From contig NC_043011.1 in assembly GCF_006345805.1 (NCBI RefSeq), forward strand, positions 8,246,001-8,310,000: 64,000 nucleotides of DNA. Reading direction: 5' to 3'. The position numbers and the translations under genes were made by a program. Under the pieces are notes generated by a model. It saw only the letters and a list, made by a program, of their open reading frames with translations. It had not been told where the DNA came from and did not search any database. Origin of the DNA: Octopus sinensis. Its lineage: Eukaryota. Shown piece after piece: positions 7,037-59,899 of this stretch; positions within the stretch are counted from its first letter, which is position 1, and each line of letters starts with the position of its first letter.

Positions 7037-7136
7037 NNNNNNNNNNNNNNNNNNNNNNNNNNNNNNNNNNNNNNNNNNNNNNNNNNNNNNNNNNNNNNNN
7101 NNNNNNNNNNNNNNNNNNNNNNNNNNNNNNNNNNNN
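7037..7136. other. Assembly gap (100 N)
   Basis: Run of exactly 100 N, a typical placeholder for a gap of unknown size. Confidence 0.98.
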
Positions 7137-11341: not shown

Positions 11342-11795
11342 TATATATTTCTTTATTCATGCCCACACAGGGAGCTAACAGAGAGGGACAAAAAAGTGGT
11401 TTTAGTCGATTACATCGACCCCCAGTGCATAACTGGTACTTATTGGTGGACCCCGAAAAGATGAAAGGCAAAGTTGACCTCGGCGGAATTTGAACTCAGA
11501 ACCTAGCGGCAGACGAAATACCTATTTCTTCACTACCCAGAAGATGCTAAAAACATAGGGGACAAATAAGGACAGACAAACGGATTAAGTCGATTAGATC
11601 AATCCCAGTGCATAACTGGTACTTATTTAATCGACCCCGAAAGGATGAAAGGCAAAGTCGACCTCGGCGGGATTTGAACTCAGAACGTAGCGGCAGACGA
11701 AATACCTATTTCTATTTCTTTACTACCCACTAGGGACTAAACACAGAGAGGACAAACAAGGACAAACAAATGGATTAAGTCGATTATATCGACTC
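11342..11795 (-). mobile_element. SINE family A body concatemer (2-3 head-to-tail units)
   Basis: The GAAAGGCAAAGTCGACCTCGGCGG body repeats at about 184-bp spacing, with GACGAAATACCTATTTC junctions at about 11513 and 11697. Confidence 0.85.
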
Positions 11796-19861: not shown

Positions 19862-20630
19862 GGAGGTGAGCTGGCAGCAGCGTTAGAGCGCCGAGCGAAA
19901 TGTTTAGCGGTATTTCGTCTGCCGCTACGTTCTGAGTTCAAATTCCGCCGAGGTCGACTTTGCCTTTCATCCTTTCGCGGTCGATAAATTAAGTACCAGT
20001 TACGCACTGGGGTCGATGTAATCGACTTAATACCTATGTCTGTCCTTGTTTGTCCCCTCTATGTTTAGCCCCTTGTGGGTAATAAAGAAATAGGTATTTC
20101 GTCTGCCGCTTACGTTCTGAGTTCAAATTCCGCCGAGGTCGACTTTGCTTTTCATCCTTTCGGTGTTGATTAAATAAGTACCAGTCACGCACTGGGGCGG
20201 ATGTAATCAACTTAATCCGTTTGTCTGTCCTTGTTTGTCCTCTCTGTGTTTAGCCCCTTGTGCGTAGTAAAGAAATAGGTATTTCGTCTGCCGCTACGTT
20301 CTGAGTTCAAATTCCGCCGAGGTCGACTTTGCCTTTCATCCTTTCGGGGTCGACAAATTAAGTACCAGTTACGCACTGGGATCGATGTAATCGACTTAAT
20401 CCCTTTGTCTGTCCTTGTTTGCCCTCTGTGTGTTTAGCCCCTTGTGCGTAGTAAAGAAATAGGTATTTCGTCTGCCGCTACGTTCTGAGTTCAAATTCCG
20501 CCGAGGTCGACTTTGCCTTTCATCCTTTCGGGGTCGACAAATTAAGTACCAGTTACGCACTGGAATCGAATTAACCGACTGACCCCCTCCCTAATAATTT
20601 CGGGCCATGTGCCTAGAGTAGAAAAGAATA
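19862..20630 (+). mobile_element. SINE family A with one head and four tandem body units
   Basis: Units begin GGTATTTCGTCTGCC at 19909, 20093, 20278 and 20462 (periods 184, 185, 184). The last unit ends in the GCCTAGAGTAGAAAAGAAT tail. Confidence 0.92.
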
Positions 20631-27021: not shown

Positions 27022-27428
27022 AGGCGTCGAGCTGGCAGACTCGTTAGCACGCCGGGCGAAATGCTTAGCGGTATTTCGTCTGCCGTTACGTTCTGAGTTC
27101 AAATTCCGCCGAGGTCGACTTTGCCTTTCATCCTTTAGGGGTCGATTAAATAAGTACCAGTTATGCACTGGAGTCGATATAATCGACTTAATCCGTTTGT
27201 CTGTCCTTGTTTGTCCTCTCTGTGTTTAGCCCCTTGTGGGTAGTAAAGAAGCGTCTACCGTTACGTTCTCAGTTCAAATTCTGCCGAGGTCGACATTGCC
27301 TTTCATCATTTCGTGGTCGATATATTAAGTACCAGTTGCGCACTGGGGTCGATGTAATCGGCTTAGTCCCTTTATCTGTCCTTGTTTGCCCCCTGTATGT
27401 TTAGCCCCTTGTTGGCAATAAAGAAATA
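27022..27428 (+). mobile_element. SINE family A with head and two body units
   Basis: GGCGTCGAGCTGGCAGACTCGTTAGC head. The body repeats at about 27070 and 27250. Confidence 0.88.
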
Positions 27429-40847: not shown

Positions 40848-41782
40848 ATAAAAAAGTGGTTGACCCACAATGAAAGTATTCATGCTCACTGTGATACCGA
40901 GTTCCCTTTCTTCTGACAGCAAGCACTAAGATATGCGTGTGTAGTATATATATACACACATACACACACGCTAATATCGAACAGTTAGGATGGGTGTTCA
41001 ACACTCCATTGATGGATAGATATTCTTTATATGCGGGTTAACAAGGCTACTATTGGTTTCATGCCGAGAGAAGATTTCTCAGCAATTATCAAACCTGCCG
41101 CATGAGATATATATTGTGTGCTACGGTAATAGCTACTTCCCTGAATAATTAATAATGTTTCGTTAATTTAATTATATACAATATACCTGCTGATTTCAAA
41201 CAGCGTGGTAGTTAATTTTGCTTTTTATCTTTCCCAGTTCGATTAAACAGGTACCAGTTATGCACTGGGAAACGTCACAATAACCATCTCTGTCGTACCC
41301 AGAAAGACATAATACCGTGCATTTAACATTATTTGCCTACGACCAGAAAAGACTAATTACATTGTTGAGTGATTGTATCTTTGTATAGCTGAGGACAATA
41401 ATAATGCGATGTTTTCCATAGAATAATGTTGGAAATATATTTGTCTTGTGGTGGCAGAACAAGCTTCAAGCGACATATTTGAGCTAACGGCTGTGCAAGG
41501 ATAAGTTTTCTAAAATATTTAAGGACATTCGAAGGATTGCTTTGGTCCATTAGTAACACGTCTGTCCTTTATTTTACAAGAGATTTTGATTCAAGTTCCA
41601 AGGGTAGCCATAAACTCTTTCAATCCAAAGGCTTTATAACCCCATAATTACACAATGATGTTTATAGATTTTCTACCTCAAGATCCATTGTCTCCCCCAA
41701 GAAACCCCCAATTATTTCACGTTCTCTCGAAGTTTGCAAAGTCCTATGGCTTCGCCTAAATAATATATATATATATATATAT

Positions 41783-42583: not shown

Positions 42584-42875
42584 TTGTGGCCTAGTGGTTA
42601 GAGCAGAATACTCACGGTCGAGCGATCGCGGGTTCGAAACTCAGACCGGGCGATGTGTGTGTTTATGAGCGAAACACCTAAGCTCCACGCGGCTCCAGCA
42701 GAAGGTAATTGCGAACTTCTTTCACCACAACTTTCTCTCACCCTTTCCTCTTGCATCTTGCAGCTCACCTGCGACGGACTGGCGTCCCGTCCAGGTGGGG
42801 AACCTATACGCCAAGGAAACCGGGAAACCGGCCCTATGAGCCAGGCATGGCTCGATAAGGAACAAACAAAACAAA
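42584..42875 (+). mobile_element. SINE family C, short-tail variant
   Basis: TGGCCTAGTGGTTAGAGC A-box and GGTTCGAAACTC B-box. Tail shared with 6402-6695. Confidence 0.8.
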
Positions 42876-43338: not shown

Positions 43339-43369
<31 letters not shown>

Positions 43370-43628
43370 GCAATTAAGGACAACTACTTAATAAGGAAAA
43401 CTTAACAAGAAATTGTCAGGTAGATAGCGTAAAAACCTCATAAGAGAAAAAATTTCGAAAATAATTATTTCTTATTGAAACATATAATTTATATATAGAG
43501 GGCATTATACATACATGCCAGGAGGCATTCTACATACACGCCATACGCTAAGAGGGACAATCAGTCATTTCTACCAAAAATATTACTAATCCTACCGAAT
43601 GCAATTTTTCAAAGAAAGACATTTAAAA

Positions 43629-43690
43629 ATATATAGACCTGTATCACAGTGATTTCATACTTACGTAATCATCAGCAGGCCTGAATATAC
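43629..43690 (-). ncRNA. Type I hammerhead ribozyme, unit 1
   Basis: GUAUAU-UC-AGGCCUG-CUGAUGA-UUAC-GUAA-GUAU-GAA-AUCAC-U-GUGAU-A|CAGGUCU-AUAUAU. The CUGAUGA, GAAA and UH core elements are intact. Predicted cleavage between 43642 and 43641. Confidence 0.88.
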
Positions 43691-44108
43691 TATAATAAAC
43701 AACGACCCTGCTTCGCTTAAGCCGATCAGCTAATTGATCAACATCAACGAAGCACATGGGTGAATTTATATATACTATATCCGGATGAATGGCAAACTTT
43801 TACGAATTGCATTTCGGGAGAGGAAAAGTTTTTTCGGAATAAAAATTTAGCAATTAAGGACAACTACTTAATAAGGAAAACTTAACAAGAAATTGTCAGG
43901 TAGATAGCGTAAAAACCTCATAAGAGAAAAAATTTCGAAAATAATTATTTCTTATTGAACATATTAATTTATATATAGAGGGCATTATACATACATGCCA
44001 GGAGGCATTCTACATACACGCCATACGCTAAGAGGGACAATCAGTCATTTCTACCAAAAATATTACTAATCCTACCGAATGCAATTTTTCAAAGAAAGAC
44101 ATTTAAAA

Positions 44109-44170
44109 ATATATAGACCTGTATCACAGTGATTTCATACTTACGTAATCATCAGCAGGCCTGAATATAC
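44109..44170 (-). ncRNA. Type I hammerhead ribozyme, unit 2
   Basis: Identical to unit 1. Predicted cleavage between 44122 and 44121. Confidence 0.88.
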
Positions 44171-44588
44171 TATAATAAACAACGACCCTGCTTCGCTTAA
44201 GCCGATCAGCTAATTGATCAACATCAACGAAGCACATGGGTGAATTTATATATACTATATCCGGATGAATGGCAAACTTTTACGAATTGCATTTCGGGAG
44301 AGGAAAAGTTTTTTCGGAATAAAAATTTAGCAATTAAGGACAACTACTTAATAAGGAAAACTTAACAAGAAATTGTCAGGTAGATAGCGTAAAAACCTCA
44401 TAAGAGAAAAAATTTCGAAAATAATTATTTCTTATTGAACATATTAATTTATATATAGAGGGCATTATACATACATGCCAGGAGGCATTCTACATACACG
44501 CCATACGCTAAGAGGGACAATCAGTCATTTCTACCAAAAATATTACTAATCCTACCGAATGCAATTTTTCAAAGAAAGACATTTAAAA

Positions 44589-44650
44589 ATATATAGACCT
44601 GTATCACAGTGATTTCATACTTACGTAATCATCAGCAGGCCTGAATATAC
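44589..44650 (-). ncRNA. Type I hammerhead ribozyme, unit 3
   Basis: Identical to unit 1. Predicted cleavage between 44602 and 44601. Confidence 0.88.
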
Positions 44651-44893
44651 TATAAATAAACAACGACCTGCTTCGCTTAAGCCGATCAGCTAATTGATCA
44701 ACATCAACGAAGCACATGGGTGAATTTATATATACTATATCCGGATGAATGGCAAACTTTTACGAATTGCATTTCGGAGAGAGGAAAAGTTTTTTCGGAA
44801 TAAAAATTTAGCAATTAAGGACAACTACTTAATAAGGAAAACTTAACAAGAAATTGTCAGGTAGATAGCGTAAAAACCTCATAAGAGAAAAAA

Positions 44894-44933
<40 letters not shown>

Positions 44934-45076
44934 CATACATATATACATACATATCTATAAGAAGAAGGAGAAGAAGAAGAAGAAGAAGAAGAAGATGAAG
45001 AATGAAAGAGAAGGAAGGGGGAGTAAATGGTTAATACTTGTAAATTATTGGGTGAAACAAATAAATGTAATATGGC

Positions 45077-55229: not shown

Positions 55230-56105
55230 CGGCCTGTTTGCTCTTCTCAAGTAGAGAGCTAACCACGTCTTCACGCTCACCTTATTCTTGCTGTCTTACC
55301 GCAGCCCCACATCCTGCACTAACCACTTTGCCCTTCTCTTATATAATAAATAAGGGTCTTCTGCAAGGTTTACATCTGGCAGGTTTTCATTCCCCAACGT
55401 ATTGGCCAAATAAAAGCGTTTAAAATGAAGACGTTTAGCAGGATGTTTCGAAGTCGGAAGCATCTGGCCGTGAAACGGACTTCTTCTCACCCACGCGGAC
55501 ATATTCGCTGGTTGAGCATTACGTAAATATTTTCGCGTACTTACTGTAAATGACAAGTTATCCGACTGATCATACGCAGATGTTTATATCGATTAAACAA
55601 ATCGAATTAAAGCGATTGGCCGAATGTTGTGTGTGTGTGTGTGTGTATGTCTGTGTGTGAGTGTGTGCGTGTGCATGTGTATGCGTGTGTGTGTGTATGT
55701 GTGTTTGAGAGAGAGAGAGAAAGAGAAAGAGTGAGTGTAAGCGAGAGAGAGGGAGAAAGAGGGAAAGAGGGAGGGAGAGGAATACAATTAGGAAGATCGG
55801 AAGGATAATTTGATTGTCAAGTCATTACGCTAATTACGGGAGTTTTAAACCCCCTGAATTAATTTGTGTATGACTAAAATATATTTCATAGCAAAGGAAA
55901 TGACATCAGCGCTCGTTCTCTCCCTCTTTCGTTCGTGTTTTCCTTCTTTATTTCTTTCGTCCTTTCATCCACTTCTTCTTTCTTCCTTTCTTTCTTTCTT
56001 TCTGTCTTTCTCTCGTTTTTACTTTCTGTCTTCTTTTCTTTCTTTCTCTCTTTCTATATTTATCCACGTATCTATCTGCATAACTACCAAACTATATCTC
56101 TCCCT

Positions 56106-56491
<386 letters not shown>

Positions 56492-56492
56492 A

Positions 56493-58905
56493 GGCAGGGC
56501 GCTGTGAAGGTGCCATCACGGCGGCGGAAGTGCAGGAAGCGTTGGCAGAATGCTCGAGGGACAAATCGCCGGGTTTGGATGGTCTACCCTACGAGCTTTA
56601 CAGTTTGGAGACGTCTTGGCAAGAGGAATGTAATAGATAACTTTAGGCCCATCACTCTGCTTAATGCAGACTTGAAAAGTTTGTCCAAGGTGTTAGCCAA
56701 GAGGTTGGCGCTTGTCATCGAGAAACTGGTCGACAAGGCGCAAACGTACGCCGTGCCGAGCCGGAGCATCCATGACATCCTCCACCTGATGGGCTACATC
56801 ATAGACAGGGTAGTTAAGGAACATGGGTGGGGCGCTGATCAATTTGGATCAATCGAAAGCTTTCGATAGGGTAGACCATCGATACTTGGAGGCTGTCCTC
56901 AGAGCGGCTGGTTTCGGTCCCGTCTTCCGCGGCTGGATAGTCGCTTTATACAGAGGCATCCGTTCAGTAATTCGCGTAAATGGACATCTATCGAGACCTT
57001 TCGACATTACACGTTTGGTCCGTCAGGGATGCCCCCTCTCGTCGTTTCTATACGTATTGACTCTCGAGCCATTATTGCGGAAGCTGGCAAATCTGAGGGG
57101 CATCCCGCGAGAACTGGGATGCGGGACGAGCGTGTCTGCATACGCGGACGACGTCACCGTCATAGTGTCAAGCCATGAGCACATCGAGCAGGTCGGCGAG
57201 ACACCGAAAAACTACGAAGCGGTGACAGGAGCGAAAATCAACCGGGAAAAATCAATGAGCTTGCGACCTGGAGAAGCAAGCCCATGCCGTCCACCAGCGC
57301 CTCCGTCGTGGGACGCTGGACCGACGGTCCGGTCGAGTTGCTCAGGGTCTGATTTAGTCCGAACCTCCAAATGGAGAAGAACTGGAACAAGATAACGAGT
57401 AGGGTGGTCACTCTTGCCCAGCAATGGGCCGAGAGGAAACAGTCCCTAAAAGGTCGGGCGGAGTTGGCGAACTCGTACATCGCGTCCGTTATCTACTACC
57501 GCCTGACCGTCGTACGTTGTCCCGACCCTACCATCACCAAACTAGAACGCATTTCTTCCGCTTCCTGTGGAAAGTATGCGTCCCGATGGTCAGGCGATCC
57601 ATTTGCTGTCAACACCCGTTAAAAGGAGGACTGGGCATGCCGTGGTTGATGATGCGCAGACACGCGCTGAGACTGCGACATCTCAGACTCTTCGTAGACG
57701 ACGGTGAACAGGTGTGGTCGCCGTTTGTGAGGCACGCTTTCCCGCAGCTCGTCTCCATGACCGAACTGCAGTCGTGGATCAAAAAGAGGCCGAGGAAGGG
57801 CGAATGGCACCGCGAGTGTCGCGTTGCTCTCAATCAACTCTGCCGCCCCGGGTCGACCTTGAGTGACTCCAACACAACCCAAACATTCTATAGGGGATTA
57901 GTGGAGAGGAGGTACGACGACGAGCTCGGGGCGAACCTGGACGTCGACGAGGAGTACCTGACCCGCCTGTTCAGGACGACTTTCGGGCCAGGACCCATGG
58001 ACAACTTCCAGAGATCCCTGGCCTGGCAATGCTACCGAGAAGCGCTACCCGTTCGGGATAAGCTCTACAGACACGGCTCAAGAAACACGGGGCCGACCTG
58101 CACGAGATGCGGGAAGAGCGACGAAACCATTCTGAACGCACTCGTGCAGTGTCCAACAATCTCCGACCTGTGGGCTTATGTCGAACGGCCGCTGTCACGT
58201 GTGGGACGAGTCGGTTTATCGGCCGAGTCTATCATCAATATTGTGACGCCTCCTTCCTTCAAACGGGAAGGAAGAGCTATTTTCATCATCCTTGTGGAGA
58301 TGGCGAAAGAATGTATCTGGTGGACGCGTCTGAAAGGATTGGAGACAAACACTTTCCTCTCTGGTCAATCTCTCATCAACTTCTTCAAGTACCACTTGAA
58401 AAGGAAAGTGAGAGTAGAGAGGTAAGTTTTGTCTAGCGAATGTTTTAAAAAAAGATGGATGAGTGTAGCAAGGATGGCACGTATGAATGACGAAGCCACC
58501 TTGAGCATAATCCTATGAACCCAGAAATTGAAAACAGAGGGTTACCTACTTGCAAACAAATGTGGTAACATGTAACGATATTGACTGAGGTTACCTTAGT
58601 CTTATCCGTAGGCTTTTCTTCCCACGGATAAACCTTATCTGCTTCCCCCCTTACACCTTACATCATGACACTGTGATACACGATCCCTATTGATAGTTTT
58701 TTTCCCCTTTTTCCTTTTTTTTTCTTCTTTTTTCTTTTTTCTTTTCTTTTATTTCTGTTCCGTTTTTTTCTTTTTTTTTTCTTCTTTCCCTTTTTCGATC
58801 CCTTTTGATCGAAAACCTACCCCACTTCTTTTTTCCCCAAAAAAGAAAAGCTCTACTTCGTAATCTGTCCCGTCTGTGTGCAGCTCTGTGTGGCTAATAA
58901 AAAAA
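56493..58905 (+). mobile_element. 5'-truncated Tx1/L1-clade non-LTR retrotransposon (RT plus C-terminal Cys motif), frameshifted
   Basis: Motifs [36 protein letters not shown], GxRQGCPLS, YADDVT and CTRC...ETILNALVQC; T-rich 3'UTR; AATAAA at 58896 with a short A tail. Several frameshifts. Confidence 0.92.
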
Positions 58906-59591: not shown

Positions 59592-59899
59592 CTAATCTTA
59601 ACCCTAACTGTAACCCTAAACCAAAACCTATACCCAAACCCTAACAATAAACTCTAAACTTTAACCCTAACCATAACTATAAACCCTAAACCTAGTCCTA
59701 ATCCTAAACCTTAATCCTAACACTAATACTAAGCTGCAACCCTATACCCTAACTTTAACTCTAAGCCCTAACCCTAATCCTACCCTTTCGCCAATCATAA
59801 GTCACAAACATAACTCTAACACCCATCCCTAAACCCTAACTCTCACCCGAAACCTGAAACCTTAACCCCAGCCCATATGCTAAACCCTAACCCTAAACC
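59592..59899. repeat. Degenerate (CCCTAA)n telomere-like tract
   Basis: Many exact AACCCTAA units among 6-7-mer variants. Confidence 0.75.

What the first reader, a model, noticed from the sequence alone, without database searches (positions are those of the whole stretch)
43366..44893. 480-bp tandem array with an intact hammerhead ribozyme in every unit: candidate retrozyme / circRNA system
Seen: about 3.2 head-to-tail 480-bp units, near identical, without an ORF, inserted in (TA)n. On the minus strand each full unit contains AGGCCUG-CUGAUGA-UUAC(GUAA)GUAU-GAA-AUCAC-U-GUGAU-A|CAGGUCU. This gives a 7-bp stem I extended by 6 bp beyond a UC bulge, an invariant core, a GNRA loop II and an AUA cleavage triplet. 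Established: type I hammerheads in tandem genomic repeats define metazoan non-LTR retrozymes, the newt, schistosome and cricket satellite hammerheads, and Penelope-like element terminal repeats. Multimeric transcripts of such repeats self-cleave into monomers that can circularise. Inference: a minus-strand transcript would release two 480-nt monomers (44601-44122 and 44121-43642). The array ends do not coincide with the cleavage site and overlap by about 86 bp, as expected from rolling-circle reverse transcription of a circular RNA. I cannot tell whether this family has been described.
Basis: partly seen in the sequence, partly recalled or inferred. Interest (0 to 1): 0.93.

Follow-up and report, generated by a model that had tools for sequence, protein, structure and literature searches.

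The report
Hammerhead-ribozyme tandem repeat (animal retrozyme)
A 1.5-kb block of three and a bit copies of a 480-bp non-coding unit, each carrying a hammerhead self-cleaving RNA motif, sits inside a (TA)n microsatellite in what is probably an octopus genome; it looks like one more member of the known "retrozyme" class of small circular-RNA mobile elements, with an unusual mismatch next to the ribozyme core.

Summary
At 43366-44893 there are 3.18 head-to-tail 480-bp units, 99-100% alike, non-coding, that split an in-phase (TA)n tract. Each full unit carries, on the minus strand, every invariant hammerhead core nucleotide, a 7-bp helix I, a GUAA-capped helix II and an AUA cleavage triplet.

"Intact hammerhead" overstates it:
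- Positions 10.1/11.1 are U·U, not the conserved G-C.
- Helix III cannot form as drawn and is marginal alone (-0.2 kcal/mol).
- No Rfam hammerhead model matches, even at E≤10.

The near-palindromic helix III gives a stable double hammerhead between two copies (-12.1 kcal/mol). This is the dimeric mode described for newt and axolotl repeats and Penelope-like elements.

The 480-nt monomer is far more self-paired than shuffles (z = -5.8). A hammerhead descriptor expects about 0.003 chance hits per window.

Best reading: a non-LTR retrozyme-type element, probably from an octopod. Its size, copy number, GC content and (TA)n target are all within published ranges. I found no relatives in any searchable collection, so conservation, copy number, expression and cleavage remain untested.

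One new detail: both array ends fall exactly on the only two AAAAA|TTT sites of the unit.

Verdict: new member of a known kind, moderate interest.

The parts
43366..44893 (-). Whole insertion: 3 full units plus an 88-bp partial unit (1528 bp). The functional polarity is inferred to be the minus strand.
   Evidence: TRF, unit register, junctions and in-phase rejoined (TA)n.
43339..43365 (.). Left half of the split (TA)n target microsatellite.
44894..44959 (.). Right half of the split (TA)n target microsatellite (imperfect, with TACA variants).
43635..43682 (-). Hammerhead motif copy 1 (helix I 5' strand to helix I 3' strand). Predicted cleavage between 43642 and 43641.
44115..44162 (-). Hammerhead motif copy 2. 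Predicted cleavage between 44122 and 44121.
44595..44642 (-). Hammerhead motif copy 3. Predicted cleavage between 44602 and 44601.
43642..44121 (-). Predicted 480-nt monomer RNA (5' C at 44121, 3' A at 43642). Highly self-paired when folded as a circle.
   Evidence: Circular MFE -119.3 against shuffles -87.5±5.5, z = -5.8.
44122..44601 (-). Second predicted 480-nt monomer RNA.
   Evidence: Coordinates follow from the cleavage sites.
44807..44893 (-). Terminal partial unit (87-88 bp, bounded by the two AAAAA|TTT sites of the unit). It repeats the segment at the other end of the array.

Best explanation
The array is a genomic copy of a non-autonomous, non-coding retroelement of the metazoan non-LTR retrozyme type, in a probable octopod genome.

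Inferred life cycle:
1. The minus strand is transcribed as a multimer.
2. Two neighbouring hammerhead motifs, 480 nt apart, pair through their near-palindromic helix III (AUCAC-U-GUGAU) into a double hammerhead.
3. [quoted passage not shown]
4. A host tRNA-type ligase circularises the monomers into a compact, highly base-paired circle.
5. The reverse transcriptase and GIY-YIG nuclease of a Penelope-like element, which favours (TA)n targets, copies the circle (or an uncleaved multimer) for more than one turn into a nicked (TA)n tract. This gives a permuted, greater-than-unit-length tandem insert.

Shown here: the array, its precise insertion in (TA)n, the complete invariant core, helices I and II, the stability of the dimeric helix III, and the unusual self-pairing of the unit.

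Inferred: transcription, cleavage, circularisation, and the mobilising enzyme.
For: Array and ends.

Core and helices, in three identical copies on one strand: C3-A9 is CUGAUGA, G12-A14 is GAA, with A15.1/U16.1, H17 = A, a 7-bp helix I and a GUAA loop 2.

Chance expectation is about 0.003 per window: 1 relaxed hit in 38.3 Mb of random sequence.

Folding of the hammerhead:
- The hammerhead fold is within 2 kcal/mol of the MFE.
- Helix III alone is -0.2 kcal/mol, but two copies give a 5+U·U+5 helix of -12.1 kcal/mol. The cofold MFE of -34.5 is the double hammerhead.
- In a 601-nt dimeric transcript the double-hammerhead fold is -152.6 against an MFE of -154.4.

Self-pairing of the monomer: z = -5.8 for the hammerhead polarity (16 G·U pairs) and -4.3 for the complement. 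Twelve flanking controls ranged from +0.2 to -2.9.

Other features: non-coding; GC 32.5%.

Literature:
- Metazoan type-I hammerheads have helix I about 6 bp, helix II about 4 bp, and a short palindromic helix III that works as a dimer in tandem repeats (PMC4209133).
- Retrozymes occur as tandem repeats in molluscs and other invertebrates (PMC7229834).
- Retrozyme consensus lengths are 51-972 bp, and 75% of families have at most 7 units (10.64898/2026.07.22.740005).
- (TA)n is a preferred target of Naiad PLEs, and a nuclease-linker motif was proposed to mediate such microsatellite bias in Neptune PLEs (PMC8557442).
- Octopus genomes carry PLEs (PMC13282606).
- Hammerheads with helix II replaced by a linker can still cleave (PMC544870).
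Against: - No Rfam hammerhead model matches, even at E≤10 on a 101-nt piece.
- 10.1/11.1 is U·U instead of the 'highly conserved G10.1-C11.1' pair (PMC4209133), which removes the G10.1 base of the A9/G10.1 metal site (my own knowledge).
- Helix II has only 3 Watson-Crick pairs.
- The three copies are identical, so there is no evolutionary evidence for the motif.
- No related sequence turned up in any collection I could search.
- No PLE reverse transcriptase or GIY-YIG domain lies in the 64-kb window.
- Tandem arrays of a hammerhead-free SINE-like unit also occur here, so tandemness alone does not prove a circular template.
Confidence: 0.65

Rival explanations
1. It is a relic. The unit descends from a hammerhead-bearing retroelement (a retrozyme or a Penelope-like pLTR), but the ribozyme is crippled by the U·U at 10.1/11.1 and the short helices II and III. 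The array is now an inert tandem repeat that may have grown by unequal crossing-over or replication slippage.
For: - U·U at 10.1/11.1, and no Rfam match.
- Helix III pair probability is about 1.5%.
- Other tandem arrays without a hammerhead occur in the window.
- No PLE lies nearby.
Against: - All 13 invariant positions are intact in every copy.
- The units are 99-100% identical and the insertion in (TA)n is clean, which points to a recent event from an active master copy.
- The dimeric helix III is stable.
- Minimal hammerheads lacking helix II still cleave (PMC544870).
Confidence: 0.2
2. It is a tandem of Penelope-like element terminal repeats (pLTRs) left after loss of the internal ORF, rather than a dedicated non-autonomous retrozyme family.
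For: - The (TA)n target, the partial-tandem architecture and a hammerhead in the repeat are PLE traits (PMC8557442, PMC4209133).
- Xenopus retrozymes are sister to pLTRs.
Against: - There is no RT or GIY-YIG remnant in the unit or the window.
- The PLE-type minimal hammerhead has an extra base after A9, G10.1-C11.1 and a long helix II. That pattern is absent here and nowhere else in the window.
- The distinction from a retrozyme is partly semantic if retrozymes derive from pLTRs.
Confidence: 0.12
3. The motif is a chance resemblance in an ordinary minisatellite or satellite unit.
For: - There is no Rfam hit and no evolutionary conservation data.
- One other weak descriptor hit occurs in unique sequence at 41389 on the + strand.
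Against: - The expected number of chance hits is about 0.003 per window and about 2.5e-5 within one 480-bp unit.
- The motif coincides with a retrozyme-like unit size, strong strand-biased self-pairing, a palindromic helix III and a (TA)n target.
Confidence: 0.03
4. The copy number, or the array itself, is an assembly artefact: one unit or a dimer expanded, or a longer array collapsed, by the assembler.
For: Units differ only by 1-nt indels in homopolymer or low-complexity runs, the typical long-read error pattern. The surroundings are microsatellite-rich, with 20% of the window in tandem repeats.
Against: Both junctions with unique-phase (TA)n are clean, and the partial fourth unit is exact. 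This does not affect the identity of the unit.
Confidence: 0.1

Closest known systems
Metazoan non-LTR retrozymes, e.g. Mytilus galloprovincialis 350-390-bp repeats (Cervera & de la Peña 2020, PMC7229834)
   Same: Both are tandem non-coding units with one type-I hammerhead each, low GC and a highly self-paired predicted circle. Both hosts are molluscs. In both, the hammerhead lacks the archetypal loop 1-loop 2 nucleotides.
   Different: - The unit is 480 bp, above the 170-400 nt of that paper but inside the 51-972 bp of the 2026 preprint.
- 10.1/11.1 is U·U.
- Helix III is weak, so the motif probably depends on a dimer, whereas most invertebrate retrozyme hammerheads were reported to cleave as monomers.
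- Expression and circles are not shown here.
Newt satellite 2 / axolotl retrozymes (dimeric type-I hammerheads)
   Same: Both have a short, palindromic helix III that is stable only as a double hammerhead between tandem copies. Both are tandem genomic repeats.
   Different: Those are vertebrate elements with different sequence and unit size, and they have canonical G10.1-C11.1.
Dolichopoda cave-cricket pDo500 satellite (PMC2837043)
   Same: The unit is about 500 bp (463-505 bp) with one hammerhead. Single- and double-hammerhead modes have been proposed. Multimeric transcripts are processed to monomers.
   Different: It is a high-copy satellite (about 5% of the genome) with documented conservation and compensatory changes. 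Here only one 3.2-copy array has been seen.
Penelope-like element pLTR minimal hammerheads (PMC4209133)
   Same: Both use a type-I topology and dimeric action and sit in partial-tandem architecture. (TA)n/microsatellite insertion bias is known for Naiad PLEs and has been proposed for Neptune PLEs (PMC8557442).
   Different: There is no RT-EN ORF. Helix II is short, not 6-8 bp. There is no single bulged base after A9 with a G10.1-C11.1 pair. A real, though weak, helix III is present.
Plant LTR retrozymes
   Same: Both are non-autonomous, release a circular RNA by hammerhead cleavage, and are mobilised by a borrowed reverse transcriptase.
   Different: Those carry type III hammerheads in LTRs, a PBS and PPT, 4-bp TSDs, use Ty3/Gypsy machinery and are 600-1000 nt long.

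Membership tests
Hammerhead ribozyme (type I) | Invariant core C3 U4 G5 A6 N7 G8 A9 ... G12 A13 A14 | tested here: met
   CUGAUGA ... GAA in all three copies.
Hammerhead ribozyme (type I) | A15.1-U16.1 pair and H17 (not G) at the cleavage site, followed by the helix I 3' strand; helix I open-ended | tested here: met
   GAA-A...U-A|CAGGUCU. Helix I is 7 bp plus a 6-7 bp extension after a UC bulge, with pair probabilities 0.91-0.999.
Hammerhead ribozyme (type I) | Highly conserved G10.1-C11.1 pair closing helix II | tested here: not met
   10.1/11.1 is U·U. Helix II is 3 bp (U-A, A-U, C-G) plus a GUAA loop. The conservation is stated in PMC4209133.
Hammerhead ribozyme (type I) | Helix III closed by a hairpin, or formed in trans as a double hammerhead | tested here: met
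   Alone, the hairpin is 4 bp plus a 3-nt loop at -0.2 kcal/mol. In trans it is 5+U·U+5 at -12.1 kcal/mol, and the cofold MFE is the double hammerhead.
Hammerhead ribozyme (type I) | Match to the Rfam hammerhead covariance models (clan CL00010) | tested here: not met
   No hit at gathering score. No hit at E≤10 on 1.65 kb or on 101 nt.
Hammerhead ribozyme (type I) | Site-specific Mg2+-dependent self-cleavage | not testable with these tools
   Needs in vitro transcription of monomeric and dimeric constructs.
Metazoan non-LTR retrozyme | Short tandem repeats, each unit with one type-I hammerhead; no LTR and no ORF | tested here: met
   3.18 units of 480 bp. The longest open frame is 54 aa. The array abuts (TA)n directly.
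Metazoan non-LTR retrozyme | GC content below 50% | tested here: met
   GC is 32.5%.
Metazoan non-LTR retrozyme | Monomer RNA predicted to be stable and highly self-paired | tested here: met
   Circular MFE is -119.3, z = -5.8, with 63% of bases paired. Flanking controls gave z from +0.2 to -2.9.
Metazoan non-LTR retrozyme | Multiple dispersed genomic copies with the hammerhead conserved | not testable with these tools
   There is no other copy in the window. Nothing was found in the metagenome, viral, prokaryote or protein collections. The source genome is not searchable here.
Metazoan non-LTR retrozyme | Expression as linear and circular RNA of unit length | not testable with these tools
   No transcriptome access.
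Metazoan non-LTR retrozyme | Co-occurrence with Penelope-like elements in the genome | tested here: inconclusive
   There is no PLE RT or GIY-YIG domain in 133 ORFs of at least 85 aa in the window. Octopus genomes are reported to carry PLEs (PMC13282606), and the window shares a SINE with O. sinensis.
Penelope-like element (pLTR pair) | RT plus GIY-YIG ORF between the direct repeats | tested here: not met

The most novel reading that the evidence does not exclude
This is an active cephalopod retrozyme family whose hammerhead works with a U·U in place of the near-universal G10.1-C11.1 pair and only as a double hammerhead, which is why covariance-model screens miss it. Its insertions are sequence-directed at both ends: they start and stop at AAAAA|TTT sites of the template and land in (TA)n. 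That would be the first junction-level evidence for how a Penelope-type enzyme copies a circular or multimeric retrozyme RNA.
Probability: 0.25. Interest if true: 0.55.

Novelty: new member of a known kind. Interest (0 to 1): 0.38.

Why it matters
If the element is active, it would extend hammerhead circRNA retroelements to cephalopods. I found no paper in the held library that describes them there; the only relevant mention is a count of 235 Rfam 'hammerhead 1' hits in the giant squid genome (PMC6962438).

It would also give a natural test of how much the 10.1-11.1 pair matters in a full-length, dimer-acting hammerhead.

It would show that Rfam-based screens under-count such ribozymes.

The clean (TA)n insertion, together with both ends at AAAAA|TTT, is a concrete and checkable clue to the still unproven link between retrozymes and the Penelope-like integration machinery.

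If the element is inactive, it is an ordinary young tandem repeat.

Tried and rejected
- **Rfam.** I searched the whole window at gathering score, then the array and a 101-nt piece at E≤10. No hammerhead or any other ribozyme family appeared, only noise such as miRNA models on the (TA)n tract.
- **Relatives.** All of these were empty:
  - exact look-ups of the 37-aa and 41-aa unit ORFs;
  - a concatenated six-frame peptide query against 5.8 billion proteins;
  - exact and gapped hammerhead patterns in the metagenome, viral and prokaryote-genome collections.
- **Other copies in the window.** blastn of the unit against the window found none.
- **PLE linkage.** A Pfam screen of 133 ORFs found only a LINE-type RVT_1/zf-RVT. 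A PLE-type minimal-hammerhead descriptor got no hits.
- **Second descriptor hit at 41389 (+).** Its stems are all A-U or G·U, it lies in unique sequence, and Rfam finds nothing there. I treat it as chance.
- **Independent covariance model.** I wanted to build one from the cricket pDo500 alignment, but the supplement text is garbled (dots collapsed) and unusable.
- **A correction to my own reading.** After I thought the complementary strand was unstructured. With its own shuffles it gives z = -4.3. Both polarities are self-paired, the hammerhead polarity more so.
- **Literature on activity of 10.1/11.1 variants.** No usable paper in the library.

Full report
**1. What is there**

Tandem Repeats Finder reports a single array at 43365-44894 with period 480, 3.2 copies and 99% matches. 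In register, the units start at 43366, 43846, 44326 and 44807 and are 480, 480, 481 and 88 bp long.

The only differences between units are one-base indels in homopolymer or low-complexity runs. There are no substitutions. This pattern could be long-read assembly noise.

The array is bounded by (TA)14 on the left and an imperfect (TA)n on the right. Removing exactly 43366-44893 (1528 bp) rejoins an in-phase (TA)n tract. So this is a clean insertion into a microsatellite, and any target-site duplication is hidden in the repeat.

The unit does not code. In a circularised unit the longest stop-to-stop frames are 54 aa on the + strand and 51 aa on the - strand. There is no other copy of the unit in the 64-kb window.

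**2. The hammerhead motif**

The minus strand carries AGGCCUG CUGAUGA UUAC GUAA GUAU GAA AUCACUGUGAU A|CAGGUCU three times, identical each time.

These features are present:
- All invariant core nucleotides (C3-A9 and G12-A14).
- The A15.1/U16.1 pair.
- A non-G at position 17.
- A 7-bp helix I (one G·U), which continues for 6-7 A-U pairs beyond a UC bulge.

Three points qualify the word "intact":
- Positions 10.1/11.1 are U·U. Helix II is therefore three pairs under a GUAA loop, whereas G10.1-C11.1 is described as highly conserved (PMC4209133).
- AUCAC-U-GUGAU cannot close on a one-base loop. The best hairpin is 4 bp plus 3 nt, worth -0.2 kcal/mol, with pair probability about 1.5%.
- No Rfam 15 hammerhead model matches. 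This holds at gathering score on the window and at E≤10 on the array or on a 101-nt piece. By contrast, a squid genome paper counted 235 Rfam 'hammerhead 1' hits (PMC6962438).

**3. Is the motif chance?**

I wrote a type-I descriptor with these requirements: helix I of at least 5 bp, CUGANGA, helix II of at least 3 bp, GAA, A...U helix III of at least 3 bp, and H17.
- With a 10.1/11.1 mismatch allowed, it hits only the three array copies on the minus strand.
- The strict form hits one unrelated site at 41389 (+), whose stems are all A-U or G·U.
- In 38.3 Mb of second-order Markov sequence modelled on the window there were 0 strict hits and 1 relaxed hit.

That corresponds to about 0.003 expected hits per window and about 2.5e-5 inside a given 480-bp unit. 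Even so, chance is a poor explanation.

**4. How it would work**

The hammerhead fold of the 76-nt region costs -11.8 kcal/mol against an MFE of -13.8.

Helix III is nearly palindromic. Two copies pair into a 5+U·U+5 helix worth -12.1 kcal/mol. The cofold minimum of two motifs (-34.5, against 2 × -13.4) is exactly the double hammerhead.

In a 601-nt transcript with two motifs, enforcing this trans helix costs only 1.8 kcal/mol relative to the MFE.

This is the architecture described for most metazoan type-I hammerheads: helix I about 6 bp, helix II about 4 bp, and a short palindromic helix III that is active as a dimer in tandem repeats (PMC4209133). It was shown experimentally for amphibian retrozymes (PMC7229834).

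The U·U is a real departure. However, engineered hammerheads whose helix II is replaced by a non-pairing linker can still cleave (PMC544870). So it lowers confidence in activity without excluding it.

**5. The rest of the unit**

Folded as a circle, the 480-nt monomer of hammerhead polarity has an MFE of -119.3 kcal/mol. Dinucleotide shuffles give -87.5±5.5, so z = -5.8, with 63% of bases paired and 16 G·U pairs.

The complement gives z = -4.3 with 7 G·U pairs. Twelve flanking 480-nt controls range from +0.2 to -2.9.

A compact, highly self-paired RNA is a stated property of retrozyme circles (PMC7229834, PMC7761336). GC content is 32.5%.

**6. Context and host**

A broken LINE-type ORF set at about 56.1-58.4 kb has RVT_1 and zf-RVT domains. 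Its closest named relatives are in Argonauta hians, Octopus sinensis and O. bimaculoides.

A 20-kb O. sinensis locus shares a 90-135-bp SINE-like element with at least 15 places in the window at 72-89% identity. The window is therefore most likely from an octopod. This is an inference, not proof.

No Penelope-like RT or GIY-YIG domain occurs among 133 ORFs of at least 85 aa, and there is no PLE-type minimal hammerhead.

Octopus genomes are reported to hold PLEs (PMC13282606). (TA)n is a preferred target of Naiad PLEs, and a nuclease-linker motif was hypothesised to give the microsatellite bias in Neptune PLEs (PMC8557442).

A 2026 preprint finds that retrozymes co-occur with PLEs and are related to their pLTRs. 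It reports consensus lengths of 51-972 bp, with three quarters of families reaching at most seven units (10.64898/2026.07.22.740005). The present array is inside all of these ranges.

**7. A new detail**

The octamer AAAAATTT occurs exactly twice in the unit, at positions 83 and 476. Both ends of the insertion fall precisely at the A|T boundary of these two sites.

The insert is therefore [88 bp + 392 bp] × 3 + 88 bp. Its ends lie about 190 nt from the cleavage site (unit position 276/277).

A linear monomer released by the ribozyme cannot have been the template. A circle or an uncleaved multimer could have been. The matching sequence at both ends suggests that initiation and termination (or a template jump) were sequence-directed. 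I could not test this on other copies.

The window also contains tandem arrays of a ~184-bp tRNA-derived SINE-like unit without any hammerhead. So tandem organisation by itself is weak evidence for rolling-circle reverse transcription.

**8. Relatives**

I found none. Exact ORF look-ups, a six-frame peptide search, and exact or gapped hammerhead patterns in the metagenome, viral and prokaryote collections were all empty.

The source genome and cephalopod transcriptomes are not searchable with these tools. Conservation, copy number and expression, which are the decisive evidence, remain open.

In the held literature I found no description of hammerhead repeats or retrozymes in octopus.

**9. 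Verdict**

The retrozyme interpretation is the best one, at about 0.65. The main rival is a recently amplified but catalytically crippled relic, at about 0.2.

The element is a new member of a known kind, in a lineage where the kind has not been described as far as I could find. It has a non-canonical 10.1/11.1 position, probable dependence on a dimer, and informative junctions.

Noticed in passing
window 11386-11792, 19909-20563, 27077-27425: Tandem arrays (2-3.6 copies, 83-93% matches) of a ~175-186-bp unit with a tRNA-like B-box (GAGTTCAAATTCCGCCGAGG). The same SINE-like element is scattered at 15 or more places in the window and is shared at 72-89% identity with an Octopus sinensis locus (L001:3237-3365). 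ARAGORN calls no tRNA.
   Followed up: partly
window 56084-58422 (+): A LINE-type retrotransposon remnant split into three overlapping frames, with RVT_1 twice and zf-RVT. The closest named proteins are from Argonauta hians and Octopus species, and the best hit is 79% identical in an ENA metagenome contig.
   Followed up: partly
window 41383-41449 (+): A second, weak hammerhead-descriptor hit (CUGAGGA core, 36-nt helix II region, stems of A-U and G·U only) in unique sequence 2 kb from the array. Rfam finds nothing there. Probably chance, although the random expectation was low.
   Followed up: partly
window 43366 and 44893 (array ends); unit positions 83 and 476: Both insertion junctions lie exactly at the only two AAAAA|TTT sites of the unit. 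I have no explanation for this.
   Followed up: partly
window 43480, 44656-44668, 44777: All inter-unit differences are 1-nt indels in homopolymer or low-complexity runs, with no substitutions. This suggests assembly or sequencing error rather than divergence.
   Followed up: no
window 59597-59777: A degenerate interstitial telomere-like repeat (AACCCT/CTAACCC variants, 69-72% matches).
   Followed up: no
window 42586-42660 (+): A tRNA-like head (GGCCTAGTGGTTAGAGC...GGTTCGAAACTC) of another SINE-like element, 700 bp upstream of the array.
   Followed up: no
window 7037-7136: A run of 100 N (assembly gap). Overall, 20% of the window is tandem or simple repeat (179 TRF rows).
   Followed up: no
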